Part shown: positions 2,938 through 37,335 of the stretch, in pieces
Layout: every line of letters begins with the position of its first letter
How positions within the stretch are numbered: position 1 is the stretch's first letter
Assembly: GCA_904063045.1 (NCBI GenBank)
Contig: CAJFCJ010000001.1
Span: 2,542,001 to 2,606,000 of the forward strand
Reading direction: 5' to 3'
DNA length: 64,000 nt
Origin: Dimorphilus gyrociliatus
Lineage: Eukaryota > Animalia > Annelida
Position numbers and translations under genes: made by a program
Notes under the pieces: model-generated
The model's input: the letters and a program-made list of their open reading frames with translations, nothing else
What the model was told of the DNA's origin: nothing
Databases searched by the model: none

Positions 2938-3837
2938 ATTTGTATACTAAATATTGGACTATTTCTACTAATATATACATATATATATATACATATGTAT
3001 ATATGTATTCATAAGTATCATATATGCTTATTTTAAATATATAGAATTTCAATACTCTAGTCTAATAAGCTTTATAAATTACTGTATAAATATAAATTAG
3101 TATATAAAATCTCTTCAAAAACAGTTATTTTGTATTTGGCAAGAATAAATAATATATATATATATAGTTTATATTATCACTCACTATTCAATCACAAAAC
3201 TTGTACTTTCCACTAATTTAACACTAATATATCTTTTATTAGAGAAAACTTGTAATAGTTTTTTAACATAACATCCATATTCGTAAATATCCTTTTTTTC
3301 GTAAATATCAATTTGTTTTGATAAAGTTGTATTGTTAAAATTTAAAAAGCAATTTATAATATTTCTATTATTCTCTAATGTCTGTAACAAGCAAGTAGAT
3401 ATCTTATTTAATCATCAATTAAATATATCTATATATATATATATATATATAAGAGTTATACTTTAAAATATAGTCCATCTTTCTCCAAATTACCATTAAA
3501 ATAGATGTTAAATAAGTGAATTGTTATAAAAGCTTTACAAATTTGATAAGATAATCTATGTATTAATGTTAAATTAATTGGAATAGTTTTAATATGTATT
3601 TCGTCATCTTGTTGAAAAAAGTTAATAAAGTTTTCATTTAAACTTTTCAAGAAGTCAACAACTGCAAAGTTTTAATAAAGTTTGTTAAAGATTAAGCAAT
3701 TTTTTATTAGTTTTATCTTATTATTTTCTTTTTTTCTTACAATTTCTCCTAGATGAGATCATTTTATCATTTAGGATGTTCTTTCTTTTTTTGGAAGGCG
3801 AGTATCTCAATTAGTTTTTCAAGCGAATTTTACTCTA

Positions 3838-10938: not shown

Positions 10939-12455
10939 CTATAGAAGTAAGTCTATTTCATGCAATACCAAATTGGAACTGGAAAAGATTCTAGCATCGA
11001 GTATTGTTCTCGCTGAAGGTCTTTCACTTTCCGTAATACTAGTCATATGGATGAGATTTGTAGAGATTTCTGAATCGGAAGGTAGTTTTTCCTGCGATTC
11101 TTGTTCATTAGTTTGTAGATTAAATAACTGCAAACCAATTACTCCTAAACCATAAATGTCACTTGAAAAGCTATAATTATTTAGCTTGGCTTCTGGAGCT
11201 CTGTAAATACTATTAACAAGATTCTTATCTTTCTCTTCGGCTTCTATGCCCATATCAAAATTTCCCATTTTCACGAGTAAGTCGTTCGAATTGTTCATAA
11301 CAAATATATTGCTCGGTTGGACGTCTTTATGCATAATCTTTTTATCATGAAGATAATCCAAAGCTGATAAGAGCATAAGCATAATTCTCTTTTCAAATTC
11401 AAAATATTCAAAATTAGATGAAGGGATACGAGATTCAATCCAATCGGATAAGGTTCCTGTACAATATTCCATTTGAATATACATATTTAAAGTGGAAAGA
11501 TGATTTAATCTCTCTAATCTCCCCTTTTCTTCATTAGACGAAAACCAATTAACTCCATCAGCTCTTTTCTCAATTTCAAACCATTTATCATAATATTTAA
11601 CGAGATTTTGATGTTTACACTGAATCAACTGATTGATTTTCTTCTATTAAAATTAATAACATCTGTTGTTGTTTTTTGAAAAAACAAAAATATCTACTAA
11701 TCTCTTACCTGACGAATACTAATTTCGTTGAATTCTTTAAAGATAATCCTTTCAAGTTTTATATTATAAACAGTATTACTTGACTTTTCCTTAGCCTATT
11801 TCAACAAGAACGTATACATCATTTTGAAAAGGTAAAACATTTAAAAGATAAATACTTTAAAACTAGTTTTGTATTGCCTTTCAACTTGAAAGTTTAACTT
11901 GAAGAAATCTTGTTGAATAGGAATATCTGCAGTATATTCTGTTAATGCTATTCCGTAGATTCTCTCCACAATATCCTTTGAAAGTTTTATCTTATCAACT
12001 GCTTTATCCGATATATTAATTTTTGGGTGATCATCTATTAAAAAATGACTTGAATTACCTTTGTTTTTTTAAATAAAATAATGATTTTAATAAGTAAAAA
12101 AATTACTATCTAATCTATAAAATTCAATATTTGCAATATCTGTCAAAGCTTTTGCCGCTGCATCTCCTTTTGCAGTTATCTCATCAATACCGTATCCCTG
12201 CATTGGTGATATTTTAATATAAAAATATCAAAAAAATTGATATATATATGATATAGTTACAATATATTTTTTATTGAAAATTGTTAATGTAACTGTTCCG
12301 CCCGAACTGCTTTTTGGACGCTGTTCAAATTTACCATAAATAACATTTTTATCAATTTCATTCAATATTAACGATGGATGAATTTTATTGGCAAAATTTT
12401 CATTTATATCCAAATTACAGTTTGGTAGACCTGTTTTTACGTTTTCTAGTGACAT
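10939..12455 (-). CDS. K1: dsRBM + eIF2-alpha-kinase-like pseudokinase
   Basis: Exon 1 HPSLILNEIDKNVIYG...VTLTIFNKKYI spliced to GYGIDEITAKGDAAAKAL (degenerate dsRBM). Kinase exon 10939-11628 has HQNLVKYYDKWFE, MYIQMEYC, HKDVQPSN, and GNFDMG in place of DFG. No GxGxxG loop in the spliced N-lobe exons. Confidence 0.8.
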
Positions 12456-13299
12456 ATTTAAAATGTCTTCTTAAACTTCAATTAAGATTTTTATACTCTT
12501 CACAAGTCCGATATCTTATGAATATCTTCTAGATATTCAATAAATCTCATATAAATTTCATAATACACTCAAAATATTCACTATCCTTTAGTCAGGCTCA
12601 GTATTTCATTGAGATCAATTATATTCTCTTACACACTTGGATTAGTTGAATATATTAAAAGTAAGAAATAAGACGCAGTTTTCTCTTATATATTAATATT
12701 ATCAGTATTTATTAGGTCTATTTGGTAAAAGGTATAATAATTAAGAATAAATGGTAAAAACAAAAGAAAAAACTACGTTTACACTTTATTTAAATTGATT
12801 ATTTAAACATTAAAAAAATAGGAATCAAGCTAATGAAGTGCTTTATAATAACGAATTATAGTATATTCATAATATTTTGTCATTATACTAGATCTTGTTT
12901 ATATTGTCTCTTAGTTATTTGTCATTAAAAAAGTATTCTTACCTTAAAATTAGGTCAGTGACTGACAACAAAACAATAATTTTCCTTTATTTTTTACTTT
13001 AATTAAATAATGTTTATCTTCCGTTAAATATTACGGTATTTATTAACTTCTTATTTAGGTTAATAAATTATAGATAAGGAATATATACCATACTTATGAA
13101 AACTTTGCACTTTACAATACAAACAGTATAATAATAGGAATAATAATGATAAACTTTAATTCAGAACAATTGCTTCTGTAGAATTCAAGTTAGTCATTTC
13201 TTTTAATATACAGACCACGAACTTTTCTAGTCTATATTCTATCTCCGTCGTAAACGTCAAATCAATCAAATTGAAAGATTTAGATAGGTTCCAAACTTT

Positions 13300-13750
13300 G
13301 CTTAACATTTATATTCTTATTGGTTTGTGGTAAATGAAACCTTGGTGTAATTACTATGATCATGAAAGTAGGAGGAACTCCTTGGAGTACTATAAATCTG
13401 ATTCTCCACCTCGCAAGAAGTGTAAAATGACTCCAACATGGGATAAATTTCTTGTAGTAGTATCCTGGGATACTCAAGGTATCATTCACCTTTAATATAC
13501 AGAATCCAAAAGAGAGAATAAACGCTGATATATATATTAGCATCTTGAAGATGAGAAGATTTAGATCAGGAAAGGGTGTTAGTTGCACAAATCGACAATC
13601 CAAGATGTTATACTACAAAAAAAAAAACACAAAAGATTCTATGGAAATCACTCTATAGTAGATGCTAATACATCCAACAGACTCGCCGGCTATGGCTCCA
13701 TCCAACTACTTGTTAGGGCATTTGAAGAACGATTGGCGCGAGTCCATTGA
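13300..13750 (+). mobile_element. Decayed mariner (Tc1/mariner) transposase relic
   Basis: Frameshifted and stop-containing translation: VCG.ET.V.YYDHESRRNSLEYYKSDSPPRKKCKMTPTWDKFLVVVSWDTQGIIHL*, then DNPRCYT and DSPAMAPSNY. These match the mariner motifs GDETW, VFWDxxGII, DNARPH and SPDLAPSDY. Confidence 0.75.
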
Positions 13751-14420
13751 TAAAAATAGCGAATTTAATGTAAAGTAATGATTGTATATCAATTAGAATT
13801 TTTTGTTTTACTTTGTTTTTCCTATACATATACTCATTACTATAGAAATTAGATAGTTTTTCCCTCGATACCTTTAGATTAACCCTTATTTCCCTTATAT
13901 TTAGATTTGTAATTTTGTATTATCAACAATTAAATTTTAAATTACATTAAAAATTTTGTTTTCAATATTAAAAGATAAGTTAAAACTACAAAGAAAACAT
14001 AAAATATACTATAAAATCATTTTCTTTTTGGAATTCATTAATTAGAATTCATGAATTAGATGTATGATTTTAAGAGTTGTTATTTTTTTAAAATTTCAAA
14101 TTTTAACGGTTTAGTTAGGTCAATGACAGTAAGCAGAGTACTTTTCACCAACACGGGGTATGGACTATTATAAATTTATATACTGCGCTTATCTTTGCGC
14201 AGTTATGAGCACTATCACGCCTACAGGAAATGGGTAGAGAATGATGTACTATTGTATAGCGTGCGACTAGCGTGCGACAGTTACACGTGACCACAGAATA
14301 AATTGTTCAAGATTTTTCTGGTATCTAATTCGTATTTATATCATTTCAAAGAGAAAATTTACTTTTTAGATTATTATATCTTGTAATAGATCAACATTTA
14401 ATTAAGAAGTTGTCTTTAAA

Positions 14421-16355
14421 ATGGAAGTAATCGAAGTTATTAAGCCTAAGAGGCCAAAAATGTATAGCGGGCCTGATGGAGCGCTGGTGAAGAAAATGTC
14501 ATACACTCTTTCAACTATTAAACGACAAATGAAAAAACAAGTATATACCATTGGTTATCTAAAGAAAAGATTATATTGGAGTGAGAAAGTATTAGACGTT
14601 ATACGAGAAAATTTAGACGAAGCGTCAATGTCGTTTATGCGTTGGCTGGAACTGAAATCAGACTGCGTAGATATGATTGAAAAAGCGGAGAATGGATTAT
14701 ATGTGGGCAGAAGAGACAAACCCTTCGGCACTGATGTAAGCGATGATATTACGCGTGACGACGTGATTATAGATACTAATAGAATAAGGCATGAGAGGGA
14801 TATTGCTTGTTACGAGGTCATGAAAACGACAGAAAATCAAAATTATTTTTCAAATTTGAACGAGCAATTGACGAGGAAAAGAAAAGCAAGGACTACTCCG
14901 ACCGAGATATCAGCAGCAACTAGTTCCGGTTTACGAAACAGACCGTTAATTTCAAATGAACGAAGACTCAGTTTATATAGGCAGCAGACTCAAAGGCCAA
15001 GTTTTGAAGGTAATCTTCAAAACTGTGAGATATTTGTAGATGGTATTAGAGTGGGCGATAGACAAAATACATCAATCGAAATTAAACGAGAAATAATCGA
15101 TAACAGTCCAATAAAGAATTTTTCAGACATTAATATTCGTCAACAGACATCTATTTACAACAACGATATGGCAAGGTTACAAAAATCATTCGGAGAGACA
15201 GCCAAAGAGAAAACGGGAGAGAGTTTTTTAACATCGAAGCCCGTAGATAATGAAATCGAGCAGCTGGTTAGTAAACATTTGAGAAATCTAACAAAGGAAT
15301 TTGAAAGTAAAACGACAAAGATGTGGCAAACTGTGGAAGAAAGAATAACTAGCAAAATTGTTGATAAGTTGGACGGAATGGAAAAGAAATTGGATAGTAA
15401 TTGCAAAGTCATGAGGGCTGTTCAGGAACTTCATTTCGATGATATTAGTAAACGAGTTGAGTCGACAGAAAGTAAACTTGAAAAGCTTGAATACCAATCC
15501 AAAGTTAACAAGTCAATAAGTAATAAAGCGAGCACATCCAACGAAGATAAACAGATAAACAGAGAGGAACGAATCAAGTACATTGAAAGTGTTAAGCCTA
15601 TATTTAATGGAGAATTTGGATCGTTTGATAAATTTCAGACTCAATTTCAGAATATTGTCAGAAAATATAATTTTAGCAATCAAGAGAAATTACAATTATT
15701 AATAGCATCAGTTGGAGATAGTGTAAAGCCCTTATTAGATAAGTATAAGGAGGATGTAAATCATGGATATAAAAAAGCCATCCTGACATTGAAGCAAAAA
15801 TTTACGTCGTTTGACGAAGAGAACTGTAAAAAATTGATGGCGGTTGGCTCAGTCAAAAATGGTGACACTGATAGTTTGGACCGTTTGGCAGATGTTCTTT
15901 GTTCCATCCAGCAGGAATATCTGCGTGAGGGAAACTATAGTAAAGAACGCTTGAAGGGACTGGTCAATATGGTTACGCTATCGCAAATGGACCATTCTTT
16001 AAACAAGAAGTGGACACAAGCTGTCGTCAAATATAACGACCCGTCATTATCGAACTTTTTACACTTTGTGTACAGAGAAGCGACCCAAGCGCGGAAACAG
16101 GAAAATACTCCTAAACCATCTTTACTTGAATCGGCAACCAAGTGTTACTATTGCCAGAAAACGCATCTGCTGAGCAATTGTCAAGACTTTTTGAAACAGC
16201 CAGAAAGAGAGAGGCTAGCTTTCGTTGTACAGGAAGACCTATGTAAAAACTGCCTGAGTAAGCTACACGATACGGTAAATTGTTTAATAGGTCCCTGTTA
16301 CAAGTGTAAAGAGATGCTGAACTCAGCAATACACTCTTGTGGGATTCATAATTGA
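14421..16355 (+). CDS. BEL/Pao-type Gag-like protein (DUF1759-like core + zinc knuckles), solo ORF without pol
   Basis: 644-aa intronless ORF with a coiled-coil middle, PIFNGEFGSFDKFQTQF...EKLQLL...YKKAILTLKQKF (BEL gag core) and knuckles CYYCQKTHLLSNC, CKNCLSKLHDTVNC and a degenerate CYKCKEMLNSAIH. The stop follows immediately; no protease, RT or LTR downstream. Confidence 0.8.
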   Translation: MEVIEVIKPKRPKMYSGPDGALVKKMSYTLSTIKRQMKKQVYTIGYLKKRLYWSEKVLDVIRENLDEASMSFMRWLELKSDCVDMIEKAENGLYVGRRDKPFGTDVSDDITRDDVIIDTNRIRHERDIACYEVMKTTENQNYFSNLNEQLTRKRKARTTPTEISAATSSGLRNRPLISNERRLSLYRQQTQRPSFEGNLQNCEIFVDGIRVGDRQNTSIEIKREIIDNSPIKNFSDINIRQQTSIYNNDMARLQKSFGETAKEKTGESFLTSKPVDNEIEQLVSKHLRNLTKEFESKTTKMWQTVEERITSKIVDKLDGMEKKLDSNCKVMRAVQELHFDDISKRVESTESKLEKLEYQSKVNKSISNKASTSNEDKQINREERIKYIESVKPIFNGEFGSFDKFQTQFQNIVRKYNFSNQEKLQLLIASVGDSVKPLLDKYKEDVNHGYKKAILTLKQKFTSFDEENCKKLMAVGSVKNGDTDSLDRLADVLCSIQQEYLREGNYSKERLKGLVNMVTLSQMDHSLNKKWTQAVVKYNDPSLSNFLHFVYREATQARKQENTPKPSLLESATKCYYCQKTHLLSNCQDFLKQPERERLAFVVQEDLCKNCLSKLHDTVNCLIGPCYKCKEMLNSAIHSCGIHN

Positions 16356-16670
16356 GAAATGTTATAAATGGTAAAATTTTGACAACATAAATCATCTTTT
16401 ACTGTTAAAAAGTTTTTCATCTTGAACATTTGATTGTAAAACATTCAATTTGTATGTAAAATCTTTCCATTTAGCGCTAACGTGTAAGCAATATCTATCC
16501 ATTGTTATTATGAATGTTCGTAAACAAAATGTAATATTATGTGAAAGACAAGTCGTGTAGTTCTAAAAACTAAAAACTGGTAATTATTGATGGTAAACAC
16601 TCTGGAAATGGAGGATAATGAAGCAATTTCTGAACTCTCTATTTGTTCCATAGATTGTCTTGAACAGTCT

Positions 16671-17687
16671 TTAATTTAAATTTACTGTCTTCAATCTTAT
16701 TACCTTTAAAAATTCATTTCTAAACTTTGTACCAGATATTAAATAAATGTAAAAGTTACCGCCATTATTCATAAATGATAATAATGAAGTATATAATAGA
16801 TATCTAGTTATTTTAAAATATTTTTGATAGTTTCGACCATACGCTTCAATTTCTGTGAATACTATTGTTTTTATGAAATTCGGTACTGTTGTTAATAGGA
16901 AGAAAAATGAAACAAAGAGCAACATTCTTGTCAATTCCGATAAATTTTCATCATCGTTTGTTGTTGACATTGTTATTTCTCTTATCATTTGATTTCTCTT
17001 TGATAGCACGTACACCATTGCAAAGTTTATGAATAGAATTCCAATACTCGGAATTAAACCTCCAGCTATATTTTGGAAATGAGCGAGAAATTTAGTCGCA
17101 TAGGTCGTATATTGGGGATTTGATTGAATGCATACAAAGATACTATTCCACTTGTCGTTTTCATCATGAATAAAACGACTTGATCCTTTCACACCAACGT
17201 AAATAGTAAAGGAAAAGATTAATACTAGAATTAGAACTGATAGTGAACAAGCCACAAACGCCTTCCTCTTTGTACATATTGTAGATGCTTTGAGTGGAAA
17301 GAAGATAAACATACTTCTATCAATAGTCATGATCAACATCAACCATCCACTTCCAGAAAATGCAACTGGATAGGCAAAGTAAGTGATTGCGCAGGTATAT
17401 ATTTTCCTCGCATTTAGACTGAGATTGATAAAACCAGACAAAGACGTAGAAAAGATGAGACTATATAGAGCAAAAAGTGAAAAGCAGTCAAATATTGCCA
17501 AAAACCTCATATATACGGATAAAGTTGTTGTCCTAAAGCTCTTTCTACTGCTGATTATATATATCATTATATTTCCAAATATACCTAACAATACAATCAA
17601 AGACGCACAAGTTGTATAACTTATTGTGAAATATTTTGTTTCTGATTTAAAATTCAAGTAGTCTCTTAAATAGGATGAGTTTGCCAT
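16671..17687 (-). CDS. Intronless class A (rhodopsin-like) peptide-receptor-type GPCR (FMRFamide-receptor-like expansion type)
   Basis: 7 hydrophobic segments; GIFGN (TM1), LAIFD (TM2), TIDRSMFIFFPLK (DRY equivalent), FLLTTVP (TM6), NNGGNFYIYLISGTKFRNEF (TM7/H8). First ATG at 17687. Confidence 0.9.
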   Translation of the reverse strand: MANSSYLRDYLNFKSETKYFTISYTTCASLIVLLGIFGNIMIYIISSRKSFRTTTLSVYMRFLAIFDCFSLFALYSLIFSTSLSGFINLSLNARKIYTCAITYFAYPVAFSGSGWLMLIMTIDRSMFIFFPLKASTICTKRKAFVACSLSVLILVLIFSFTIYVGVKGSSRFIHDENDKWNSIFVCIQSNPQYTTYATKFLAHFQNIAGGLIPSIGILFINFAMVYVLSKRNQMIREITMSTTNDDENLSELTRMLLFVSFFFLLTTVPNFIKTIVFTEIEAYGRNYQKYFKITRYLLYTSLLSFMNNGGNFYIYLISGTKFRNEFLKVIRLKTVNLN

Positions 17688-18382
17688 TTCATAGATGATG
17701 TAATAAGGACTAAGTAACAATTAATTTTTATTATTTCAAATAAAGAATATCTTACTTTATTACATTTAGTTAGTGAAAAACATCAATAGGATAATGCACA
17801 AGTTTTTCATTCATTTCGTTTTTGTATCTTATATCATTAGCTTCGTTTTGTAAGAGATTAATTAATTTTGGGCGTTAAATGTTACACTTATATTATCTTT
17901 TAGTTTAAATAAATATTACATTTTTAATTCAATTATTATTAGATAATTTATTATCCTTTGTATTATTAAGACTTCCATAGTTCTCAACTTTTTTCTTGAA
18001 TTCTCTTACCCGTATCAATTGGGATTGAAAGAGTGATTGATGAAATGAAATATCTCTCTTTTCCTCTCTGATTATATGTTATTACGTTTTTTTTCTATTC
18101 AATAGTGTATCGTAATTAAATATGGGCGTTACTTTTCGTTATATAAACAAGGTAAATGATTAGTAGATACAGTTTGTACAGAGTACTGAACGCTCAGGTA
18201 GGAAAAGTTTAGATGAAGATAATGGGATATAAGAAAACAATCTTATAAAAGCCGACATCATTATTCTTTATACAGTATATACAGTGTATAAATAAAGAGT
18301 TATAAATACTTAAATAAAAAAATTTAGGACCAAACATCTGTGACTGTATTGAACACGGTTAACATGTTGTCGAACCATCGAA

Positions 18383-21300
18383 TCAGAACACGATCTTATT
18401 TTCTGCCTCATTAAGAGTAGCTCTTGAAATCTTAAGGCGAAACTCGCGAAACTCCGATACCATATAATGATTAATACTCTTTTTCTCGAAGGGATATGAT
18501 GAATGCCTGCGATGCACCGACACCATACAATGATCAATACACTTTTTCTCGAAGGAATCTAATAGAGACTTCCCTATGCTTTTTAAATCTGTCAAGTCCT
18601 GAAATTTGTCCAAAGATGACATGTAAGGTAGAATAGAAATTTGTCCAATCTTAGCTATCTGTCTGAAGTCGTTTGTAGAAATAAAAATATTAGTTGTTCT
18701 AATATTTCCATGAACTTTAAAGTGCTTGTAGACGTAGTTCAAACCAGAAACTATATCGTCAAAGAGTTCACGCTCTATATCCTCATTTTTTTTGTCCTCT
18801 AGCCAGTTCTCTAAATTTAAACAAATATATTCCATTTGAACGTATATTTGTAATATTGGCTCTTTTGTTCTAGGACTGCTCTCTAGCCATATTTGGAAAT
18901 ATCTCAGCACATTTGAATGTTTAAATTGAAGTAGACTATAAACGTTTTTTATTGTCTGAAAGGAAAAGTGTTGCATTAACATTTTATTAGATTAAATTTA
19001 TATTCTTCATACTTGCAAATAATTACGTTTACTAATGTCTACAAATTTAATTTTCTTAGCGTCTACAATAAAAATCCCTTTGTCCAGATTCTTTTGAACC
19101 TAAAATAGAAGAAAATGAAATTTGAAAACTTAAAAAAGTTCATTTTAAAGAAAATTCAAACCTTTGCAACTAATCTAGTTTTACTTTGATGTACAATTGC
19201 GCTAATTGTGAAACTACCTTTAAAAAAATTTTTTTTAAAAGGCTTGATCTGTTCACTTACAACAAGTTGATTAATCAATGCTTGTTTTTTTTTATCAAGT
19301 TTTGAATTATCAAAGACGGAATCCCAAGGAAATCCTTCCGCCAGACATTCTGAAAAACAATCATTTTTTTTTGACTTAAGACTAAGATTTTTAATTTGTT
19401 AAAGCAATAATTTGTAATATCTTACTCTGAAAATTTCTATAAGAAAACTCATAAAGATTTTGAAGGAGTTCACTAGCAAAGATTCTCTTTTCTTTTCGAG
19501 TCTTTCCCACGACCTATATGTCAATGATTTGTTATATATTTACATTGAGATATTTAAAAGCAACCTTAATTATGTAGATTGGACCGTTAATAGTTACCTC
19601 CTGATATGCGTTTCTATGATTCTTTGAAAATTTTAAAGACTTGGAGCAGACTGAAAGAATACTGCATGGATGAACACTTTTCCTATTGAACGAATACGGC
19701 AATTCTGATTTAGTATTTATACTATCTTCTTCGATTGTTTTAAGGTTTAATGATGGAGATTTCTTAACAAGCTGATGAGGAGGAATGCGTCTCATCTTAG
19801 AATCAGGTAAAGTCATAATTTTGACGTAATAAGAAAATAAAGTGAATTCATCAGGCTGGAGATCATTGCTATGTAGTAATAAACCATTATTAGTATTGTT
19901 TAATCTTTCTATAAAATCCTGAAGAGTTTTACACTTGCTAAGCATTAGTTGAAATACTCTTCCAAGGCTATAAATATCAGATGGATAAGAATATGTTGAC
20001 CCTTTTGCCTCTGGCGCTCGGAATATTAGTGTTCCAATATTAGATGTAAATTTAGTATCTTCAGTTTGAACATCGTGAATTAATCTTGATAGTCCAAAAT
20101 CGCCTACCTTAGCCATGAACTTGTTATTCTCTTTTATCACCAAAATATTTGAAGGTTTGATGTCTCTGTGTAATACCTCCTGCGAATGCATATATTCAAG
20201 AGCGGATAATAAGTTGTGCATCATATCTATTTCTGTAGAAAAGTCATAAATGGTCCCAATTTTACGAATGCTAAACAACCAATGTTCTAGATTCGCCAAA
20301 CATAGTTCGGTTTGAATATAAGCGTACAGGCGGGGAAGACGACTCAACCTTTTGTTCATTTCGATTTCTTTCAATGATTTACTCGAATTGACACTTGACG
20401 AGTAGAATGATAGACAATTCTTATCTTGTTCTTCAATTTCAACCCACGACGTGTAATATCTAACAATATTAGGATGATGAAGTTTAGCTAGCACAGACAT
20501 TTCTCTGAAAGACTAATAATTGATCCATATTATAAATTTCCTTACAAATTCACTTAAAATACCGTTTTTAGTACTGTAGAATCTAATGTCTGAAGTGCTA
20601 TTTCCTGCTTTTTTATAGCAAAATATTGACGGTTATTCTTGCTGGCCTAAAATAAATAATTTAATAAATAATTATAAAGATTCTATTAAAAAGATTAACT
20701 TTATAAACAACTCCAAATCCTCCTTTTCCAAGAATTTCTTTTTCTATATTTCTCTTTTTAGTATAGTCAAAATCTATTGTATGAGAGTGTGTTTGTTTCA
20801 TATCGTTTTTAATTAATTGTTTTAAGAAGTAAGTGTACAACTTCGCTTTACATTTCCATTCAACCACTATATTATCAACATTTTGGCTATTCAAAAAAAA
20901 CCAAAACTTCTTCTTACCTAAATGAAACAAAGTAAGAATTTATAATTGGTTGTAATAATAAAGTGTTACTTTTTCTTCTTAGAAGAATGCTAAAACATTT
21001 TTCCAAAGCTTTTACAGCTGCTTTCAATTTTCTTTTTTTCTTACTGGCCGTCTAGAGGTTGAAATTTACAAATTTATTTCTATTAATGCATAATAATTCA
21101 ATAATTTGTTGCCTTTATGAATGTGCCATCGATGAGTAATTCGTAATCAGATAATTCCATATTATACATTATTTTTTCGTTGAATAATTCCTTATTACAT
21201 GATCTTATGATTGTAATCATTTCTAGAGGTGATACCACAATTTTCAAGTCGCCGTCACCCTGTGGCCGTAAGTCAACATAGCCATGATTTACGTCTTGTC

Positions 21301-21484
21301 CATTATTTCTGCAAGATAAATGATTAAATCATACAAAAATACATAATAATAGACATTGCTTTTATATTAATACTTTCGGATTAGCGGTTCTCTTGTATTT
21401 AGCATGATAATGTATTTTTTTTGGTTCTACAGCCAACAAACATGCATAAAGATTCTCTGTCGTCATCATAATGTTCTTGAACAT
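18383..21484 (-). CDS. K2: degenerate dsRBM - active eIF2-alpha-type kinase - degenerate dsRBM - truncated pseudokinase
   Basis: Hand-spliced exons: YELLIDGTFIK|TASKKKRKLKAAVKALEKCF; LGKGGFGVVYK|..YFAIKK; HHPNIVRYYTSWVE, YIQTELC, HRDIKPSN, DFG, GTLIFRAPE; then HPCSILSVCSKSLKF..VTINGPIYIIK|VVGKTRKEKRIFASELL; second domain HSNVLRYFQIWLE, YVQMEYIC, HGNIRTTN, GQIS. Confidence 0.75.
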
Positions 21485-22473
21485 TCTACGATTCCTAGAT
21501 CACGTGTTAAAGGCAGCAATATTTTTAGGTATTTAGGTGTATATACATGGTTAAATACGAGGTTATATAATATATATCTTAATCGCTTATGATCCAATCA
21601 ACAACCTGCTTTTATTTAAACATTGAATATTCAATATCGTTATAAACTATTTCAGTATATGAAGGTGCAACCTAACTTGTACACTTATTGCTTTGATTGG
21701 ATATCTTATAACGTACTTTCGTTTTTGATTTGTTTTAGAATTTTGATAAAATGATGAAATATTAATTAGTTTATGATAAATATGATATATAGATATTGTA
21801 ATATATTTTTTATACCCTTTCTATTTTTAGTAGCTTTCCCCAAAATGTGATTTTCCTTGAAGAATACTCTGATAACTAATTTAAATATATGAATAAGCAT
21901 ATTCTTTTATTCACATATGTTATTGGTCATCATATAACACGTTAGTCTGCTGTCTGTAAGAAGATAATAGCATTGTTTGTTAAGGTTAGAAAATGTTAAT
22001 TAGCCAGGAAATTTAGATCAGTCGTATATGTAATGTACAGTTGATGACAAGCTAGTTGTTACATTCTGTAGAATACTCTATTTGTCAAAGTCATTCAGCA
22101 TGGCCTATTGGATTATTATCTAGTGTATATCAATGTACAGCTGTGGTGAGAAAATTGAAAATTCAGTAGCAGATTACCCATCCATATTTTTCAGTGGTTG
22201 ATTTTATGTATATACAGTATATTTTATTATATATATAAATAACAGAATTGATTCTATTAACCTATGTATGTATATAATAGCTTTTTATTATACGAAATTC
22301 ACAGATGAAGAACATTAATTCGCTATATATAAGACTTAATCTTATCTTTCTAATAATTATGTTTGATATACTGTGGACAGCTAGGTTAATAGTTTCGTTT
22401 TTTCAAATAGATCAACAAGTTAGAGAAGATATTTTGAAGAAGTTATAAAACTTAACATTGAAATTTATTGAAA

Positions 22474-24328
22474 ATGGCTTCTGCAAGTTCACAGAATTAT
22501 ACGTCACTTTTAAACGAACTTTTTCCGGGTCAAATCCAGGTGAAATTTCTTTTTCTCTTGTATTCTATTGAATATTATAGTCTTTTTTTTATTTTACAGT
22601 ATACGGAAGTTAAAAGTGGTCCAGACCACGATCCTACATATAAAATTTCGCTAAAGTTACGAGGAAAATCGTTTCAAGGAATTGCAACAAATAAAAAAAC
22701 AGCTAGAAAGTTATGTGCTGAACAAGCTTATAATCACTTTAAAAGCAATAGTATTAACGAAGAGAGAAGGGATTATCAATTATCTGAAGATGTCCTAAAT
22801 CCATCAGTAATTCTAAATAAAGTTACTAAAGGTACTAGATACAGTTTAGTCGAACAAAATGGTAATAATTCTACAGTGGACGTTTCAGTAGAGGGAGCTG
22901 TGTATCGGGTATTAATTAAAGCATAATTCAAATAATGCTTTAAAGCCGTTATTTAATATATAAATTAAAATTTTAAAGGGTACAGGTAGCGACGAAGCAA
23001 TGGCTAGAGCAGATGCAGCAGCTCGAGCTCTGACAACTCGATTTCAAATTGAATTTGATAGGGAAAATAATAGTATTATTTGACGGAACACATTTTAAAA
23101 ACTATTTTAATATATTTTCTTTATTTAAAATGTAGATCAAATCCCTAAAATTGCCTTAGCAAGTATAAAAAAACTATCTGGTAAAGTAGCCCCAAAAGTA
23201 CTTGAAGAAATTTACCAGAAAAGTTTAGAAGAGTACAATAAAGATATTTCTATCGATACTGGACATTTCAAGAGACATTTTTTTGATGAAACAGAACTTG
23301 GTTCGGGATCTTTTGGATCTGTTTCAAAGGTTTTAAATAATTTTCATCGTTAAAGGTGTATAACATATGTTTCATTATTTCTTTAAAGGTAAAAAGTCGT
23401 ACAGATTCACAATTCTACGCAGTCAAGAGGGTTACTTTGCTACCTTTGAAAAAAGAAGAAATTATGAAGGTATCACATTTGTTTCTTGCTTTATACTTTC
23501 CTCATTCACTTCCCTTTTTAGACGTCAAGAGAAGTTATCCACCTATCCGTCTTGAATCATTCAAACATTATTAGATACAATCGAGCTTGGTTTGAAATTG
23601 GATACATACCAACAGGTCCAGATCATATACCCTGTTTGCACCTGTATATTCAAACAGAATTATGCAATCATGATTTATCATATTGGATCAAAAACAGAAA
23701 AAATCATCCTGAAATTATTAACAATAACACTGATGAAGTGAAAATCATGCACGATGTTTTGTCAGCATTGAGTTATCTTTGTAAACAAAAAGTTATTCAT
23801 CGAGATATCAAACCTCAAAATATATTTATTATCGAAAGGTCAGATTCGAATGAACTAGTTGTAAAATTGGGCGATTTTGGTTTATCTAGAGTTAAAGATT
23901 CGATGGCGAAGCTCACTGGTGGTATTGGAACGCCTTTTTACTTTGCTCCAGAGGTATTAACTGGCGACTACAGCTACCCAAGTGATATTTTTAGCTTTGG
24001 TTTAGTAACTCTCGAATTATTTGGACTTCACAAAAGCTCTGACGAATTACGATTAGATGTTGGTGCACTTAGAAATGAAAATACACCGCCAGCTCAACTT
24101 AACCATAAATATCCCCAAATATACGACATCGTTAAGAAAATGACAAAAACCTCACCAACAGAAAGACCCACTGCAGACGAATTACTTAACATGGGTCTTT
24201 TTGAAAACTATTCATCGAGGAGTTATCAAGATTTGGTAAAAGAAAATGAGCAATTAAAGGCTACTGTATTTCAACAGAATAAAAGAATAGAAGAGTTACA
24301 GATGATAATCGATTCTCTTCGTACTTGA
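22474..24328 (+). CDS. K3: 2x dsRBM + eIF2-alpha-type kinase + C-terminal coiled coil (PKR-like architecture)
   Basis: dsRBM1 SLLNELFPGQIQ|YTEVKSGPDHDPTY...GIATNKKTARKLCAEQAY; dsRBM2 NPSVILNKVTKGTRY...AVYR|GTGSDEAMARADAAARAL; GSGSFG, YAVK, HSNIIRYNRAWFE, LYIQTELC, HRDIKPQN, DFG, GTPFYFAPE; heptad tail LVKENEQLKATVFQQNKRIEELQMII. Canonical GT-AG introns of about 55-70 bp. Confidence 0.9.
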
Positions 24329-24947
24329 TATTGAAGAATACAGCTAGACATCTCCTCTGGAATGATATTGCCTAAACTCTCTTCGATCTTTTAATACTGT
24401 TATTTAGTGCATTAATACATAATAAACTAATAAACAGTTTTACTTGAAAACACCATAAAATCTTTACTTTTCATTTATTGGATATTTAATATTCACAAAA
24501 TCTTTACAATCGTCATTTTTATGAATATTAATATGGTAGTATGTATGTATATTTTATACATATACGATGACATTACTCGCTATTTAAACTGGAGAACAAG
24601 ATCACTTTAGGGCAGGTAGTTGATTCACTAGCTGATATGAGTAATAAGTTATATCTAAAGCCAAATATTTAGAATTCGAAAGTAACTTGGCAAAAACCAG
24701 AAATCTATATAAAGTACGACTAGAGCAACCTAAAGGAGGTCTCTTACTATACTATTTATATGAGCAGACGAACTTAGTTGCTATTTTGACTCATTCAGAA
24801 GAGTTCTTAATTTAAAACACCATTAATTAACTTAAATCTTAAAGGTAAGAATTATGATTTATTTGATGGTACATTCTTACTTACGATCGTCGTTTAATGT
24901 CAAGGATATTTTTTAAACTATGACTTTCAATTTCAGTATTTACATTC

Positions 24948-26567
24948 ATGGAGCCTGAGAATATAGATTATATCTCACTTTTAAACAGGAAATTCGGCAA
25001 ACACGTTAAAGTATGTAAAAAATAATCATAACAAAGTAATTCTATATTCATCAATGTAAATAGTACGTGGATGTTGAAAGCGACGACGATGGTAAACCTA
25101 TATCCGATTTTACAAAGAAAATTCTCATCCCGACTAAAAAAGGTGAAATATCATTCACGGCAATCGGTCGAAGTAAAAAGATAGCTAAGCAAGCTGTTGC
25201 GAAAAAGGCATATCACTCACTTTTTGAAACAAATTTCTTTTCTGAATCTAAAAAAGAAAGATGTCAAGTATATATTCAAGTTTAATAAAATATTTAAATA
25301 GATATAAGAACATTATTTCTTCTTATCTAGGATAAAAAGGAGGAGAAAATTGAAGAAGAAGAAGAAAAAGAAGAAGAAGAAGAAGAAAAGGATAATAGGA
25401 AACAAACGTCTTTTTCGGAGAAGCTAGATTATCAACTAAACTCTCCTATCTTAGACAATTATTATGAAAAAGTGTTCTCCGAAGAAAAGTTTATAGGTGA
25501 AGGAGGATTTGGCGAAGTTAAAAAGGTTGGTATCCTTAATAAATTATTAAAAAGAGTTCTATATTAATTATTATAGGCAAAACACAAAATAAACGAGCAA
25601 TGGTACGCAATAAAAGAAATAAAAGTGACGGATAGCAGCCCTGAAAGTATAGATAAGGTAATTCTCATTAAAAAATTCATATATTTTTAAAAGCTTAATA
25701 TATGTTTCTAATGAATAGAATAGAAGAGAAATATTATTATTATCAAACTGCTCACATCCAAATATTGTAAGATATTACGGTAGTTGGTACGAAACTCGTC
25801 AACACGAAACTTCATCATTCCCAAGTAATAGTAGTAACAATTTTAGTATATTTATACAAATGGAGTTATGTGATGGTAATTTGGAAGACTGGATATATGA
25901 TAAATCAACAAAATTGCTTTGTTTTAAGAGAAAAGTTATTCACGATATGTTATCAGCCGTCCATTATATTCATTCTTTAGAGATTATTCATAGAGATATA
26001 AAACCATGCAATATTTTAACTAATAAACAAAATGAGACAATTGAAGTGAAACTAGGGGACTTTGGTGTAGCAAGAACGATTGGGAAAAGGCACACAAGTA
26101 ATGTTGGTACACTGGGCTACACTGCTCCTGAAATAGATACTTGTGACTACGCTACTTCCGTTGATATATATAGCTTAGGGATTGTTGCTCTAGAGGTGTT
26201 TGGAAACTTCAAAACCAAAGCAGAGTTCTATCACTGTGGTAACTTGTTTAAGAAAACAGGAGAATTTCCGTCAATGTTATTAGAAAACCAAGTAATATGT
26301 GAAACTATCAAGAAAATGACTGATTCAAAAAATAGGCCAACAGCAGAGGAACTCCTAAATTCTGATGTATTTTCTGAAAGCAGGAATGACGATGTCGTGA
26401 GATTAATAAATAAAATCCAACTACAAGATCAAATAATACAAGATTTACGGCAATTAGCATCAGATAAAGATAAAAGATTAGAAGAATCAAAGAAATTGTT
26501 AGATATACAAAAACAACAAATTGAAGAAATGGAGAAATTATTTCAAATTAAACATTCTAATAAATGA
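24948..26567 (+). CDS. K4: 1x dsRBM + poly-Glu linker + eIF2-alpha-type kinase + C-terminal coiled coil
   Basis: MEPENIDYISLLNRKFGKHVK|YVD...AIGRSKKIAKQAVAKKAY; EEEEEKEEEEEEK; GEGGFG, YAIK, HPNIVRYYGSWYE, FIQMELC, HRDIKPCN, DFG, HTSNVGTLGYTAPE; long heptad tail. Confidence 0.9.
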
Positions 26568-26998
26568 CCTATTTATAGATAATTAATTAATATGTTAATT
26601 AATAAATATAAATTTTTTTATTTTGGATAATGAATTACATTATAGGATTAATTTAAGAATTTAAGTTTGTTTGACTCTTTAATAACAATTAGTCGTCTAA
26701 TATAAACATTCAATTATAAAATATTCAATAATATTTCGTTTTGCAAAAAGCTTCTAAATGAATATTTATCTTTTTGATAATAATAATATTATAGGCCTAA
26801 TATATCCTTATCAACCGCATTCATTTATTCCAGAATTTGCCTCCATCAAAATGATTAGTTATGAATCTACCGTGAATATTGAGAGTATGAATTATCTTAC
26901 TTTTATGAACACATCATTCAATTCATTTTTATTTTATTGTCTCTTTTTTCAATTGAAGAATAAAATAGCACAAAGTTAATTATTAAGAATAAGATGAA

Positions 26999-28970
26999 CT
27001 ACTTTTGAAAAGGGTTTTCCAAGATATTTGAAGCTTTTAATCGATATTTGGCTAATTCAAATTTCAGGTTGTGAATTTCCTCATTTTTCAATTCGATCGT
27101 TTTGTTTAACTGTCGAATTTCTTCATAACATTGCGACAGCGTAAATTGGTTGGCTGATTCAACGTCTTCAAATAGAAATCTACTGTTAAGTAATGTAGCA
27201 GCAGTAGGTCTTCGACTTGGATCGCTATCTGTCATCTCTTTAATTGTGTCAGATAAATATAGAGATTTAGACGTTAAATCATACGGTAAATTTCTATTCT
27301 TTGTTAAATCTCTGACGGCTTCGGCGAACTTTTCAGTTGAATCAGCAATATCTGAAAATAACTCCAACGTGACTATACCAAGGCTATATATATCGCTTGA
27401 AAAATTGTAGCTAAAAGAGTAAATTTCGGGAGCAGCGTAAAAGATGGTTCCAACTCCACCGGTTAGATTTGCAGCGGAAGAGCAAGGATTATTCACTTCC
27501 CTTGCCAAACCAAAATCACTTAATTTAATCACCATGTTACCTAGTTCATCAGCAATTAAGATGTTAGAAGGTTTAATGTCTCTATGAATAACACGTTCAT
27601 TATGAAGATAGTTTAGAGCCTTCAATATATCTCTTAACATAATCTTCTCCATCGAATAAGAGTAACTGTTTGTAACTTTTCTTCTTGACAGCCATTTCTG
27701 TAGATTTTCTACACACAACTCGGTTTGCAAATACATATTGAGACAAGGAATGTCATCAACAGTTGAATATTCTATAGCATTTGAAGTTGGATTTTCAATT
27801 TCAAACCAAGATGTATAATATCTAACAATATTTCGATGTTGATATCTAGCCAATTCAATTATTTCTCTACTTTTCTGTTAAAGTTAATACTTACTGTTTT
27901 TAATTGTTTAGAATAATTAAAAAAAAAAAGTCTACTTTACCTTCTTTAGTTTATTTTCCATTAATTCAGAAAATCGAATTTTTACCTTTTTTACGGCGTA
28001 GACTGTTCGTTCAAGTTTGTTTTCAACCTAATTTAGTAACTTGAATATATATTTAACAAGAATTGATGAAAGAGTAAGCATTACCTCATAAACTTCTCCG
28101 TAGCATCCTGAACCTATTGATTTATTTATATTAAACTCCTTTTTAAATCTTAGTTCTCTAGCATTTAAATCCTTTGTATACTCTTTGACAATGAACTTGA
28201 ATACTTGAAGTTTTTCTTTTGGAGGCAATGTTACTTCATCCAGAGCATTGCCAGATAAAACTACCTTTGGTTGGCCATCTTTTTGTTCAAGAATCAACAA
28301 TTAAATGATTTTTCATAAATTTTCAATTTGGCAATAGATAAAACCTGTTTGATATTGGAATCTAAAATTCCATAGAGTTTCCATAGTCTCAACAATTGCT
28401 CGAATTTTGGCTACTTGTTGTTTTGGGCCGAATCCCTATGAAACAATATATACTGTATTTGTAAACATTGACAGTGAATAAAAAGGAGAAAAGTCTTTCT
28501 CTCACCTCAAAAATTTGATCGTCGATACTAAGAGTAACTCTAACATTCTCATCAATATTTAATCGACCAATACCTGTCTCGTAAGCAATATTTTTATTAA
28601 TTTCATTTAATATTGAAGGGAGAGGAATTGAGATGCTAGATTCTTCATATCTTTGAAAAATATCAGGCCTCCGATTGTAATCTGCTAAAGCCATAGCTGC
28701 GCACAATTTTTGAGCATCTCTTTTGTTTTTTCCCTTCGCCTCGTATGATATACGATTTATAGTAACTTTACAAGTATATATTGGCGAATGATCCGGCCCA
28801 TCTCGATCAATAAATTCAAACTATTAAAGCTTTTATTAATTAACTTTTCCAGAAAACATCAACAATCAACAAACCTGTCTACAATGTGGAAAAGTGTCGT
28901 TGAATTTAGACATAGTATCGGGAGTAATTACCACATCGGATTCATTTGTGTCTGTTGATGACATCATCAT
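26999..28970 (-). CDS. K5: 2x dsRBM + eIF2-alpha-type kinase + C-terminal coiled coil
   Basis: PHCRQ|FEFIDRDGPDHSPIYTCKV...GKNKKDAQKLCAAMAL; PSILNEINKNIAY...QIFE|GFGPKQQVAKIRAI; GSGCYG, YAVKK, HRNIVRYYTSWFE, YLQTELC, HRDIKPSN, DFG, GTIFYAAPE; heptad tail IRQLNKTIELKNEEIHNLKFEL. Confidence 0.9.
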
Positions 28971-37200: not shown

Positions 37201-37335
37201 GAAATTTTGGCTACTATCGAAGCGATTATAACTAGGAGGTTGTAGATTTTCTTCATTAAAAGCAGCAACCGGAACGTCGTCTGGAGAACAAAAAGAAGCA
37301 TTATTGTTTAAGTAATGGACAACCGATCGTGCCAT
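34254..37335 (-). CDS. ADAR2-like dsRNA-binding protein with four dsRBMs and no deaminase domain
   Basis: Phase-consistent splicing: SPIQQLNEIRHGLQ|YIIASQTGPIHAPIFTMQVTIDGKTYEGVGHNKKAAKMQCAQNAL; KNPASILNEIRKDLEY...VDGTVYE|GVGRNKKLAKARAAQNAL..IWNL; dsRBM3 (EGAGATKPEAKKKAL); dsRBM4 (GRGKSRKEAKNVASE); stop at 34254. No HAE/PCG deaminase motifs before the convergent ACAD gene. Confidence 0.85.

What the first reader, a model, noticed from the sequence alone, without database searches (positions are those of the whole stretch)
10939..28970. Array of five dsRBM + eIF2-alpha kinase genes: a PKR-like dsRNA-sensing system in an invertebrate
Seen in sequence: five intron-containing genes (K1-, K2-, K3+, K4+, K5-) join N-terminal dsRBMs to kinase domains with eIF2-alpha-kinase hallmarks (HxNIVRYyxxWxE, variable insert, YIQxELC, HRDIKPxN). 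Established knowledge: dsRBM + eIF2-alpha kinase defines PKR, the antiviral translation-shutoff sensor, usually treated as vertebrate, though PKR-like annotations exist in some invertebrates. Inference: this is an expanded, diversified antiviral module with active sensors (K3, K4, K5), a kinase-pseudokinase fusion (K2) and a catalytically dead member (K1), resembling sensor/helper/decoy immune clusters.
Basis: partly seen in the sequence, partly recalled or inferred. Interest (0 to 1): 0.9.

Follow-up and report, generated by a model that had tools for sequence, protein, structure and literature searches.

The report
Annelid cluster of PKR-like kinases
A tiny marine worm (Dimorphilus gyrociliatus) has a fast-evolving row of expressed genes that join double-stranded-RNA-binding modules to an eIF2-alpha-type kinase, the design of the vertebrate antiviral sensor PKR, which was probably assembled independently here.

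Summary
Window 10939-28970 of the annelid Dimorphilus gyrociliatus carries five intron-bearing genes with eIF2-alpha-kinase-family domains.

- **Gene models:** public RNA contigs join the N-terminal and kinase exons of K2 and K3. My K5 model is identical to DgyrCDS664.
- **Kinase family:** a profile of the clade scores PERK 221, HRI 216, GCN2 211 and PKR 199 bits. The best other kinase scores 148.
- **Catalytic state:** K2a, K3, K4 and K5 keep all catalytic motifs. K1 and the second half of K2 are pseudokinases.
- **dsRBMs:** they are certain only in K3 and K5 (two each). K4 has one marginal dsRBM. K1 and K2 have only degenerate remnants.
- **Relation to PKR and HRI:** the kinases form their own clade (100/99), inside neither vertebrate PKR nor canonical HRI. 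The dsRBM pair is ADAR2-type and shares both intron positions with a neighbouring ADAR2-like gene. This favours an independent, convergent origin of the PKR architecture.
- **Conservation:** the cluster is syntenic in a second, unidentified species. Orthologues there are 33-46% identical, against 69-88% for the flanking genes.

dsRNA sensing and eIF2-alpha phosphorylation are inferred, not shown. Other first-reader notes of this scan cover the same genes and an upstream pair. I rate it a new variant of a known kind, interest 0.65.

The parts
10939..12455 (-). K1, 426 aa, 5 predicted exons (12455-12261, 12197-12107, 12058-11856, 11795-11709, 11643-10939). Divergent dsRBM2-type domain at 12120-12371 and pseudokinase at 10969-11927.
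   Evidence: The GT-AG model gives a clean ORF. Pkinase scores 79.7 bits on the last exon. The G-loop, alphaC Glu, catalytic-loop Lys, DFG Asp and activation-loop Thr residues are all lost. The N-terminus matches K5 dsRBM2 at domain E 1e-5. There is no RNA or annotation support for this model.
18383..21405 (-). K2, 831 aa in one ORF of 10 coding exons. Parts: dsRBM-like stretch (20980-21238), active-type kinase (19757-20765), second dsRBM-like stretch (19318-19642), pseudokinase (18509-19239).
   Evidence: Single spliced RNA contigs of 2.9-3.3 kb in 4 runs show all 9 introns. These include the 51-nt intron 19512-19562, which removes the stop codon of the first kinase. K2 is 98.7% identical to stored protein P0041. 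Pfam finds two kinase stretches and no dsrm. The kinase-then-pseudokinase order is conserved in locus L001.
21955..24328 (+). K3, 516 aa. 5'UTR exon 21955-22144; CDS 22474-24328 in 6 exons. Parts: dsRBM1 (22489-22749), dsRBM2 (22795-23053), kinase (23264-24223), C-terminal heptad-rich helix (24224-24325).
   Evidence: RNA contigs in 4 runs join all exons. Contig word depth is about 6-8 times that of K2, which is a poor measure of expression. Pfam dsrm 59 bits and Pkinase. All catalytic motifs are intact. Annotation DgyrCDS663 fuses K3 to K4, but the RNA contigs run through the K3 stop codon and end about 125 nt later.
24948..26567 (+). K4, 463 aa, 5 exons. Parts: one dsRBM with a KKxAK motif (24966-25222), acidic linker, kinase (25460-26390), C-terminal heptad-rich helix (26418-26555).
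   Evidence: Residues 22-463 are identical to DgyrCDS663 residues 497-938. Exon 1 is my prediction. The dsRBM scores about 20 bits in Pfam and 22.8 bits end to end against a PKR-derived dsRBM HMM. Catalytic motifs are intact.
26999..28967 (-). K5, 551 aa, 6 exons. Parts: dsRBM1 (28668-28925), dsRBM2 (28364-28631), kinase (27164-28150), long C-terminal helix (27017-27163).
   Evidence: 100% identical to DgyrCDS664. The AlphaFold2 model has pLDDT 87 and shows two alpha-beta-beta-beta-alpha domains, a kinase and helix 498-546. Foldseek's best hits are PERK, GCN2 and PKR kinase domains. Pfam dsrm 46.8 bits.
34254..37335 (-). Neighbouring multi-dsRBM gene, ADAR2-like, with no room for a deaminase domain. 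It is the likely relative or source of the kinases' tandem dsRBM module.
   Evidence: Its best solved-structure hit is ADAR2 dsRBM1+2. tblastn of K3 and K5 dsRBM1 hits 36760-37023 at 32-39% identity. Both introns of its first two dsRBMs lie at the same positions and in phase 0 as in K3, K5 and K1.

Best explanation
This is a tandem family of cytoplasmic kinases so far seen only in Dimorphilus and a few unidentified relatives. An ADAR2-type pair of dsRNA-binding motifs was joined to a kinase domain of the eIF2-alpha-kinase family. That reproduces the design of vertebrate PKR, most likely by convergence.

Proposed mechanism for K3, K4 and K5:
1. dsRBM1 keeps the GPxH loop (K3, K5) and the KKxAK-type helix (K3, K4, K5), and binds long dsRNA.
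2. Binding, helped by a C-terminal helix that may form a coiled coil, brings kinase domains together.
3. The two conserved activation-loop threonines are autophosphorylated.
4. The kinase docks eIF2-alpha through a (T/S)xxE alphaG helix and phosphorylates Ser51, shutting down translation.

K1 is a pseudokinase with only a non-canonical dsRBM. The pseudokinase half of K2 is similar. I take both to be regulators or decoys of the active members.

Shown: the gene structures, transcription of K2 and K3, kinase family membership, catalytic integrity or loss, the dsRBM folds, conservation in a second species, and fast divergence. Inferred: dsRNA binding, activation by dimerisation, the eIF2-alpha substrate, an antiviral role, and the roles of the pseudokinases.
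For: - **Organism and proteins:** the genes are DgyrCDS663 and DgyrCDS664 of D. gyrociliatus.
- **Transcription:** spliced RNA contigs in 4 runs link the N-terminal and kinase exons of K2 and K3.
- **Kinase family:**
  - The clade profile scores 172-221 bits on all 19 solved PERK, HRI, GCN2 and PKR sequences. The next kinase scores 148.
  - K5 alone gives the same order.
  - Foldseek on the K5 model gives PERK, GCN2 and PKR at target-normalised TM-scores of 0.8-0.88.
- **Motifs:** catalytic residues, two activation-loop Thr residues and the alphaG (T/S)xxE are present in K2a-K5 and absent in K1 and K2b.
- **dsRBMs:**
  - Pfam dsrm scores 59 and 47 bits in K3 and K5.
  - Two dsRBM folds appear in the K5 model.
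- **Independent origin:**
  - The clade has 100/99 support and lies outside the PKR clade (100/96) and the canonical HRI clade.
  - dsRBM1 of K3 scores 50 bits on ADAR2 and 20.6 on human PKR; K5 scores 38.5 on ADAR2 and PKR is not listed.
  - Both dsRBM introns match the ADAR2-like neighbour in position and phase.
- **Conservation and speed:**
  - A syntenic cluster lies beside the DAK gene in another species.
  - Orthologues are 33-46% identical, against 69% for DAK and 88% for ACAD.
  - The pseudokinase after the K2 orthologue is retained there.
- **More paralogues:** DgyrCDS653, with two units, lies just upstream of the window.
- **Literature:** papers state that PKR is absent from invertebrates (PMC5025754, PMC5851622).
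Against: - No functional data of any kind exist for these genes.
- No PERK or GCN2 sequences could be fetched for the tree, so placement within the family is unresolved. The backbone is a polytomy.
- An AU test does not reject a clade of these kinases with vertebrate PKR (p = 0.105).
- The PKR N-lobe dimer salt bridge (R262/D266 equivalents, numbering from my own knowledge) is kept only in K5. Activation may therefore differ from PKR.
- The alphaG Thr is Ser in K3 and K5, and the Glu is shifted by one position in K5.
- K3 is well represented in RNA of what look like ordinary culture or developmental samples, so it is not obviously inducible.
- dsRBMs also serve localisation and protein-protein contacts.
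- The family has been found only in Dimorphilus and a few unidentified assemblies.
Confidence: 0.6

Rival explanations
1. These are true PKR (EIF2AK2) orthologues. They were inherited from a bilaterian ancestor, kept in dinophilid annelids and lost or unrecognised elsewhere. Their distance from vertebrate PKR is the result of very fast evolution.
For: The domain order is the same as in PKR. The AU test does not reject a clade with vertebrate PKR (p = 0.105). Vertebrate PKR-type proteins are among the best hits of the K3 kinase in the 1.84-billion-protein library. The nearest ESM Atlas clusters by features are chordate dsrm+kinase clusters. PKR is known to evolve fast.
Against: - In the best tree the clade is separate from PKR, and forcing them together costs 28 log-likelihood units.
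- The dsRBMs match ADAR2 far better than PKR and share exon structure with a local ADAR2-like gene.
- Apart from the Pomacea proteins, which have the reverse domain order, no other invertebrate dsrm+kinase protein turned up in three word-indexed searches and one exhaustive search. In the exhaustive search only some hits were checked for domains.
Confidence: 0.13
2. These are dsRBM-bearing kinases with a role other than antiviral translation shut-off. Possibilities are surveillance of endogenous dsRNA or transposon transcripts, developmental or germline translational control, or a substrate other than eIF2-alpha. In that case the dsRBMs would serve localisation or dimerisation.
For: K2 and K3 are transcribed in all four runs examined, with no sign that infection is needed. 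Most paralogues lack the PKR dimer salt bridge and carry a C-terminal helix unknown in PKR. The second dsRBM lacks the KKxAK motif. Retroelement remnants lie inside the cluster.
Against: The kinase domain belongs clearly to the eIF2-alpha-kinase family, whose known members all target eIF2-alpha Ser51. The alphaG (T/S)xxE docking motif is kept. Tandem expansion, pseudokinase derivatives and divergence about twice that of flanking genes are typical of host-pathogen conflict.
Confidence: 0.24
3. The cluster is an artefact or is decaying. The N-terminal and kinase exons would belong to different genes, the K2 fusion would come from assembly or annotation error, or the copies would be pseudogenes.
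For: The public annotation does wrongly merge K3 and K4 into one protein, DgyrCDS663. K1 has no RNA or annotation support.
Against: Independent RNA contigs in 4 runs from 2 studies carry the exact splice joints of K2 and K3. All five models are open reading frames with canonical introns in conserved positions. The same cluster, including the pseudokinase after K2, exists in another species.
Confidence: 0.03

Closest known systems
Vertebrate PKR (EIF2AK2), including the tandem PKR/PKZ paralogues of fishes and amphibians
   Same: One or two N-terminal dsRBMs are followed by an eIF2-alpha-kinase-family domain. There are two activation-loop threonines and a (T/S)xxE alphaG helix. The first dsRBM is canonical and the second more divergent. 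The genes show lineage-specific tandem duplication and fast evolution.
   Different: [quoted passage not shown]
- The dsRBMs are ADAR2-type.
- The beta4-beta5 insert is short in K3 and K5.
- The PKR dimer salt bridge is kept only in K5.
- K3, K4 and K5 carry an extra long C-terminal helix.
- Some members are pseudokinases or a kinase-pseudokinase fusion.
- There is no interferon system in the host.
HRI (EIF2AK1) of invertebrates
   Same: HRI proteins are the best named hits of full-length K5 in the sequence search, at 30-36% identity over the kinase. The clade profile scores solved HRI at 216 bits.
   Different: There is no HRI2_3H domain (PF22949) and no HRI N-terminal region. The clade is not nested in the canonical HRI clade, which includes the annelid Lamellibrachia. 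Dimorphilus has a separate kinase, DgyrCDS6497, that groups weakly with arthropod HRIs but also lacks PF22949. 'HRI-derived' is therefore not established; PERK scores slightly higher.
GCN2 (EIF2AK4) kinase plus pseudokinase tandem
   Same: K2 has an active eIF2-alpha-type kinase and a degenerate kinase domain in one polypeptide. This arrangement is conserved between species.
   Different: The order is kinase then pseudokinase, whereas GCN2 has the pseudokinase first. The K2 pseudokinase is a decayed copy of a whole N-terminal-stretch-plus-kinase unit. There are no RWD or HisRS-like domains.
Pomacea canaliculata 'EIF2AK1-like' kinase-dsRBM proteins (P0206, P0286)
   Same: This is the only other invertebrate protein found that combines an eIF2-alpha-family kinase with Pfam dsrm domains.
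   Different: The order is reversed: the kinase is N-terminal and one or two dsRBMs are C-terminal. It sits on its own long branch, not sister to the annelid clade. It probably represents another independent fusion.
ADAR2 tandem dsRBMs
   Same: The dsRBM1-linker-dsRBM2 module of K3 and K5 has ADAR2 dsRBM1+2 as its best solved match. It has the same two phase-0 intron positions as the ADAR2-like gene 8 kb away.
   Different: It is attached to a kinase instead of a deaminase. The second dsRBM has lost the KKxAK motif.

Membership tests
eIF2-alpha kinase (PEK) family | Kinase domain is closer in sequence and fold to HRI, PKR, PERK and GCN2 than to any other kinase | tested here: met
   The clade profile scores 172-221 bits on all solved eIF2-alpha kinases, against 148 for the next kinase. 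K5 alone gives the same order. Foldseek's best hits are PERK, GCN2 and PKR.
eIF2-alpha kinase (PEK) family | Insert between beta4 and beta5, and the (Y)IQMELC / HxNIVRY..W.E motifs | tested here: met
   Alignment with PKR and HRI shows a variable insert, about 10 aa in K3 and about 45 aa in K2a. I309, Q310, L313 and C314 are nearly invariant; Y279 and W283 are invariant.
eIF2-alpha kinase (PEK) family | AlphaG helix substrate-docking motif (PKR T487/E490 equivalents) and activation-loop Thr (PKR T446/T451 equivalents). The residue numbering is from my own knowledge of PKR. | tested here: met
   T/S-x-x-E/D is present in K2a, K3, K4 and both DgyrCDS653 units. K5 has Ser, with the Glu shifted by one position. 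Both Thr residues are present in K2a-K5 and absent in K1 and K2b.
eIF2-alpha kinase (PEK) family | Phosphorylates eIF2-alpha Ser51 | not testable with these tools
   Needs a kinase assay or a yeast toxicity test.
PKR (EIF2AK2) orthology group | N-terminal dsRBM(s) followed by the kinase domain | tested here: met
   K3 and K5 have two dsRBMs and K4 has one. K1 and K2 have only degenerate remnants.
PKR (EIF2AK2) orthology group | Kinase domain groups with vertebrate PKR/PKZ in a phylogeny | tested here: inconclusive
   The best tree keeps the clade apart from PKR. Forcing them together costs 28 lnL, but AU p = 0.105. No PERK or GCN2 rows were available.
PKR (EIF2AK2) orthology group | dsRBMs homologous to PKR's own dsRBMs rather than to those of another family | tested here: not met
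   K3 dsRBM1 scores 50 bits on ADAR2 and 20.6 on human PKR. K5 scores 38.5 on ADAR2, and PKR is not listed. Intron positions match the ADAR2-like neighbour.
PKR (EIF2AK2) orthology group | Activation by dsRNA | not testable with these tools
   Needs binding and autophosphorylation assays.
HRI (EIF2AK1) | HRI-specific regions (Pfam HRI2_3H, PF22949; heme-binding N-terminus) | tested here: not met
   PF22949 is absent from K2, K3, K4, K5 and DgyrCDS653, and present in nearly all named HRI hits.
HRI (EIF2AK1) | Kinase nested in the HRI clade | tested here: inconclusive
   It is not inside the canonical HRI clade (85/93), and the backbone is unresolved.
dsRBM (Pfam PF00035) | Score above the Pfam gathering cut-off (23 bits) | tested here: met
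   Met for K3 (59.4) and K5 (46.8). K4 scores 20.2-20.7, below the cut-off. K1, K2 and the second dsRBMs of K3 and K5 give no hit.

The most novel reading that the evidence does not exclude
Annelids independently invented a PKR. An ADAR2-type tandem dsRBM cassette was exon-shuffled onto an eIF2-alpha kinase, giving a dsRNA-activated translation shut-off sensor. That sensor then expanded into a fast-evolving cluster with pseudokinase regulators or decoys. This would mean PKR-style antiviral immunity exists outside vertebrates and arose more than once.
Probability: 0.4. Interest if true: 0.85.

Novelty: new variant of a known kind. Interest (0 to 1): 0.65.

Why it matters
Papers on eIF2-alpha kinase evolution state that PKR is confined to vertebrates (PMC5025754; PMC5851622 finds only chordates). 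Invertebrate antiviral defence is usually described as RNAi plus PERK or GCN2.

A transcribed, conserved and rapidly diverging family with the PKR design in a lophotrochozoan would show that coupling dsRNA recognition directly to eIF2-alpha phosphorylation is a recurrent solution. It would also give a second, independent system for asking which features of PKR are essential: dimer interface, number of dsRBMs, and pseudosubstrate or decoy regulation.

Dimorphilus has a very small genome and short introns. That makes the cluster easy to clone and test.

Tried and rejected
- **Looking for PERK and GCN2 sequences among exhaustive-search hits.** I ran Pfam on 16 long hits. They were fused vertebrate PKR tandems or protist multi-kinase proteins, so the tree has no PERK or GCN2 rows.
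- **Third homologue search.** I used the K3 kinase region inside DgyrCDS663. K3 shares few 5-residue words with anything, so the search returned mostly unrelated kinases.
- **Single-sequence AlphaFold2 of K2 (P0041).** It failed at pLDDT 32. The K2 dsRBM-like stretches and pseudokinase fold remain unmodelled.
- **Identifying the species behind the syntenic locus.** The runs are SRR23372228, SRR23372229 and SRR23372216. No paper cites them. The contig of a second relative (ERR14224706) could not be read.
- **P0267/P0106.** This Logan transcript is a kinase without dsrm on a separate long branch. It is not part of this family.
- **The 'HRI-derived' idea.** It comes from other first-reader notes of this scan. 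HRI proteins top the named hits of K5, but the profile scores PERK slightly higher and the tree does not nest the clade in HRI. I consider it not established.
- **The fused K3-K4 protein of the annotation.** I rejected it as one gene. K3 RNA contigs read through its stop codon and end about 125 nt later, and there is no loose end at the proposed fusion point.

Full report
**Source and setting.** The window comes from the miniature annelid Dimorphilus gyrociliatus. My K5 model is letter for letter DgyrCDS664, and K3 and K4 match DgyrCDS663. The DNA is about 30% G+C and has introns of 50-76 nt.

**Gene models.** Six-frame reading and GT-AG joining gave five clean ORFs:
- K1(-) 10939-12455, 426 aa
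- K2(-) 18383-21405, 831 aa
- K3(+) 22474-24328, 516 aa
- K4(+) 24948-26567, 463 aa
- K5(-) 26999-28967, 551 aa

I laid Logan contigs of four public runs from two studies on 18340-24335. All behave as RNA: they skip every predicted intron of K2 and K3 with canonical ends, one of them GC-AG.
- One contig of 1.6-1.9 kb per run joins the K3 exons present in it. The 1.93-kb contig runs from the 5'UTR exon through both dsRBM exons into the kinase exon.
- A single contig of 2.9-3.3 kb covers K2 in each run. It includes a 51-nt intron (19512-19562) that removes the stop codon after the first kinase and continues in frame into a second, degenerate unit.

K5 and most of K4 rest on the public annotation. 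K1 rests on my model only. The annotation fuses K3 to K4, but the K3 RNA contigs read through its stop codon and end about 125 nt later. I treat them as two genes.

**Kinase domain.** Pfam finds Pkinase in all five genes.
- A profile of ten kinase domains of this clade scores all solved eIF2-alpha kinases first: PERK 221, HRI 216, GCN2 211 and PKR 199 bits. The best other kinase, a CDPK, scores 148. K5 alone gives the same ranking.
- The AlphaFold2 model of K5 (pLDDT 87, pTM 0.75) has PERK, GCN2 and PKR kinase domains as its best Foldseek matches, with target-normalised TM-scores of 0.8-0.88.

In an alignment with PKR and HRI:
- K2a, K3, K4 and K5 keep GxGxxG, the VAIK lysine, the alphaC glutamate, HRDIKPxN, DFG and two activation-loop threonines. 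They also keep a (T/S)xxE/D motif where PKR has T487/E490 in helix alphaG (residue numbers from my own knowledge). In K5 the motif is offset: Ser at the Thr position and the Glu one residue early.
- K1 lacks the G-loop, the alphaC Glu, the catalytic-loop Lys (DVQPSN), the DFG Asp (NFD) and both threonines.
- K2b has HGNIRTTN and GQIS at the corresponding places.

**dsRBMs.**
- Pfam dsrm passes its threshold only for the first motif of K3 (59 bits) and K5 (47 bits). Both keep the GPxH loop and a KKxAK-type helix.
- K4 has one motif with SKKIAKQ. It scores 20 bits in Pfam and matches a PKR-derived HMM end to end at 22.8 bits.
- The second motif of K3 and K5 is invisible to Pfam, but the K5 model folds it as alpha-beta-beta-beta-alpha with pLDDT 86-92. 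It lacks the lysines.
- K1 starts with only this second-type motif (phmmer domain E 1e-5 against K5).
- The two K2 stretches give no significant score, and the single-sequence model of K2 failed.

The claim that five genes join N-terminal dsRBMs to kinases is therefore firm for three genes and weak for two.

**Relation to PKR and HRI.** I built a maximum-likelihood tree of 71 kinase domains.
- K1-K5, both units of DgyrCDS653 and four unnamed Logan proteins form one clade (100/99).
- That clade lies outside the vertebrate PKR clade (100/96) and outside the canonical HRI clade, which includes an annelid HRI.
- The backbone is unresolved.
- An AU test of a clade with PKR gives p = 0.105, at a cost of 28 log-likelihood units.
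- I could not obtain PERK or GCN2 sequences, so the position within the family stays open. 'HRI-derived' is not established either.

The dsRBMs give a second line of evidence.
- K3 and K5 dsRBM1 match ADAR2 dsRBM1+2 best, at 50 and 38.5 bits. Human PKR scores 20.6 bits for K3 and is not listed for K5.
- A gene 8 kb away (34254-37335, minus strand) encodes four dsRBMs, is also ADAR2-like, and has no room for a deaminase domain.
- Its first two dsRBMs are interrupted at exactly the same two places, both in phase 0, as in the kinases. The first is after helix 1..GLQ|YII..GPIH against ..QIQ|YTE..GPDH. The second is between strand 3 and the GxG of helix 2..TVYE|GVGRNKK against ..AVYR|GTGSDEA.

Together these points favour assembly of the PKR design from an ADAR2-type dsRBM cassette and an eIF2-alpha-family kinase, independently of vertebrates. 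Shared dsRBM introns could still be ancient, so this is suggestive rather than proof.

**Conservation and tempo.** One Logan relative of K4 (P0152) lies on a genomic contig from another, unidentified species (locus L001). That contig has the same neighbourhood:
- a K2 orthologue (46% identity) followed by a pseudokinase with HTIVAAKN and GGF at the catalytic positions
- a K3/K4-like gene on the plus strand with a Pfam dsrm
- a K5 orthologue (33-35% identity), including its dsRBM region and the C-terminal helix
- then the DAK and acyl-CoA dehydrogenase genes

The flanking proteins are 69% and 88% identical. The kinases therefore diverge about twice as fast, while keeping their order and even the pseudokinase. 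More paralogues exist: DgyrCDS653, with two units, lies just upstream of the window.

**Distribution and literature.**
- Pomacea canaliculata has eIF2-alpha-family kinases with C-terminal dsRBMs, the reverse order, on a separate branch. No other invertebrate dsrm+kinase protein turned up.
- The nearest large ESM Atlas clusters with dsrm+kinase are all chordate.
- The papers I could search say PKR is absent from invertebrates (PMC5025754) or found only in chordates (PMC5851622). A survey of Aplysia found none (PMC9334734).
- I found no paper on these annelid genes. From memory only, some mollusc reviews list 'PKR-like' genes. I could not check that.

**Mechanism and verdict.** The most likely reading, at about 0.6, has three parts.
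1. K3, K4 and K5 are dsRNA-binding eIF2-alpha kinases that work like PKR.
2. K1 and K2b act as regulators or decoys.
3. The C-terminal helix gives an extra oligomerisation device that PKR lacks.

Every functional step is inference. The finding is real, and the cluster is expressed (K2, K3) and conserved in a second species. I rate it a new variant of a known kind rather than a member of the PKR orthology group.

Other first-reader notes of this scan describe the same genes, the upstream pair and the ADAR2-like neighbour.

Noticed in passing
window 34254-37335 (-): A gene encoding four dsRBMs whose best solved match is ADAR2 dsRBM1+2. No deaminase domain can fit before the next gene, which ends at 33875. 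It may be a deaminase-less ADAR2 derivative acting as a dsRNA-binding regulator next to the kinase cluster.
   Followed up: partly
window 22474-26567 (+): The public annotation DgyrCDS663 (938 aa) merges K3 residues 1-496 with K4 residues 22-463. RNA contigs end about 125 nt after the K3 stop codon, so this looks like an annotation fusion of two genes.
   Followed up: yes
window 9581-10750 (+) and 14421-16355 (+): Two long intronless ORFs lie between and beside the kinase genes. One has a weak integrase-core match (rve, 22 bits). The other is a 644-aa protein with a Cys/His-rich tail and no Pfam hit. They are probably retroelement remnants inside the cluster.
   Followed up: no
window 16671-17720 (-): An intronless rhodopsin-family GPCR (7tm_1, 65 bits) sits between K1 and K2 inside the kinase cluster.
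   Followed up: no
window 19-6774 (-): ORFs with LDLa-like cysteine modules, leucine-rich repeats and a 7TM region. They suggest one or two LGR-type (relaxin/glycoprotein-hormone-like) receptor genes upstream of the cluster. This is judged by eye only.
   Followed up: no
window 21052-21112 (-): One K2 intron has GC-AG ends instead of GT-AG and is supported by RNA contigs in three of the four runs.
   Followed up: yes
proteins P0308 and P0349 (aphids Metopolophium and Myzus, named 'EIF2AK3-like'): Short kinase-only aphid proteins of 367-417 aa group as sister to the vertebrate PKR kinase clade with 100/96 support. That placement is unexpected for an insect.
   Followed up: no
proteins P0206 and P0286 (Pomacea canaliculata): A gastropod eIF2-alpha-family kinase with one or two dsRBMs at the C-terminus, the reverse of the PKR order, on its own long branch. 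It may be another independent dsRBM-kinase fusion.
   Followed up: partly
L001 1844-4062 (-): In the second species the K2 orthologue is again followed by a kinase-like region with dead catalytic motifs (HTIVAAKN, GGF). The pseudokinase is therefore old and retained, not a recent decay product.
   Followed up: partly
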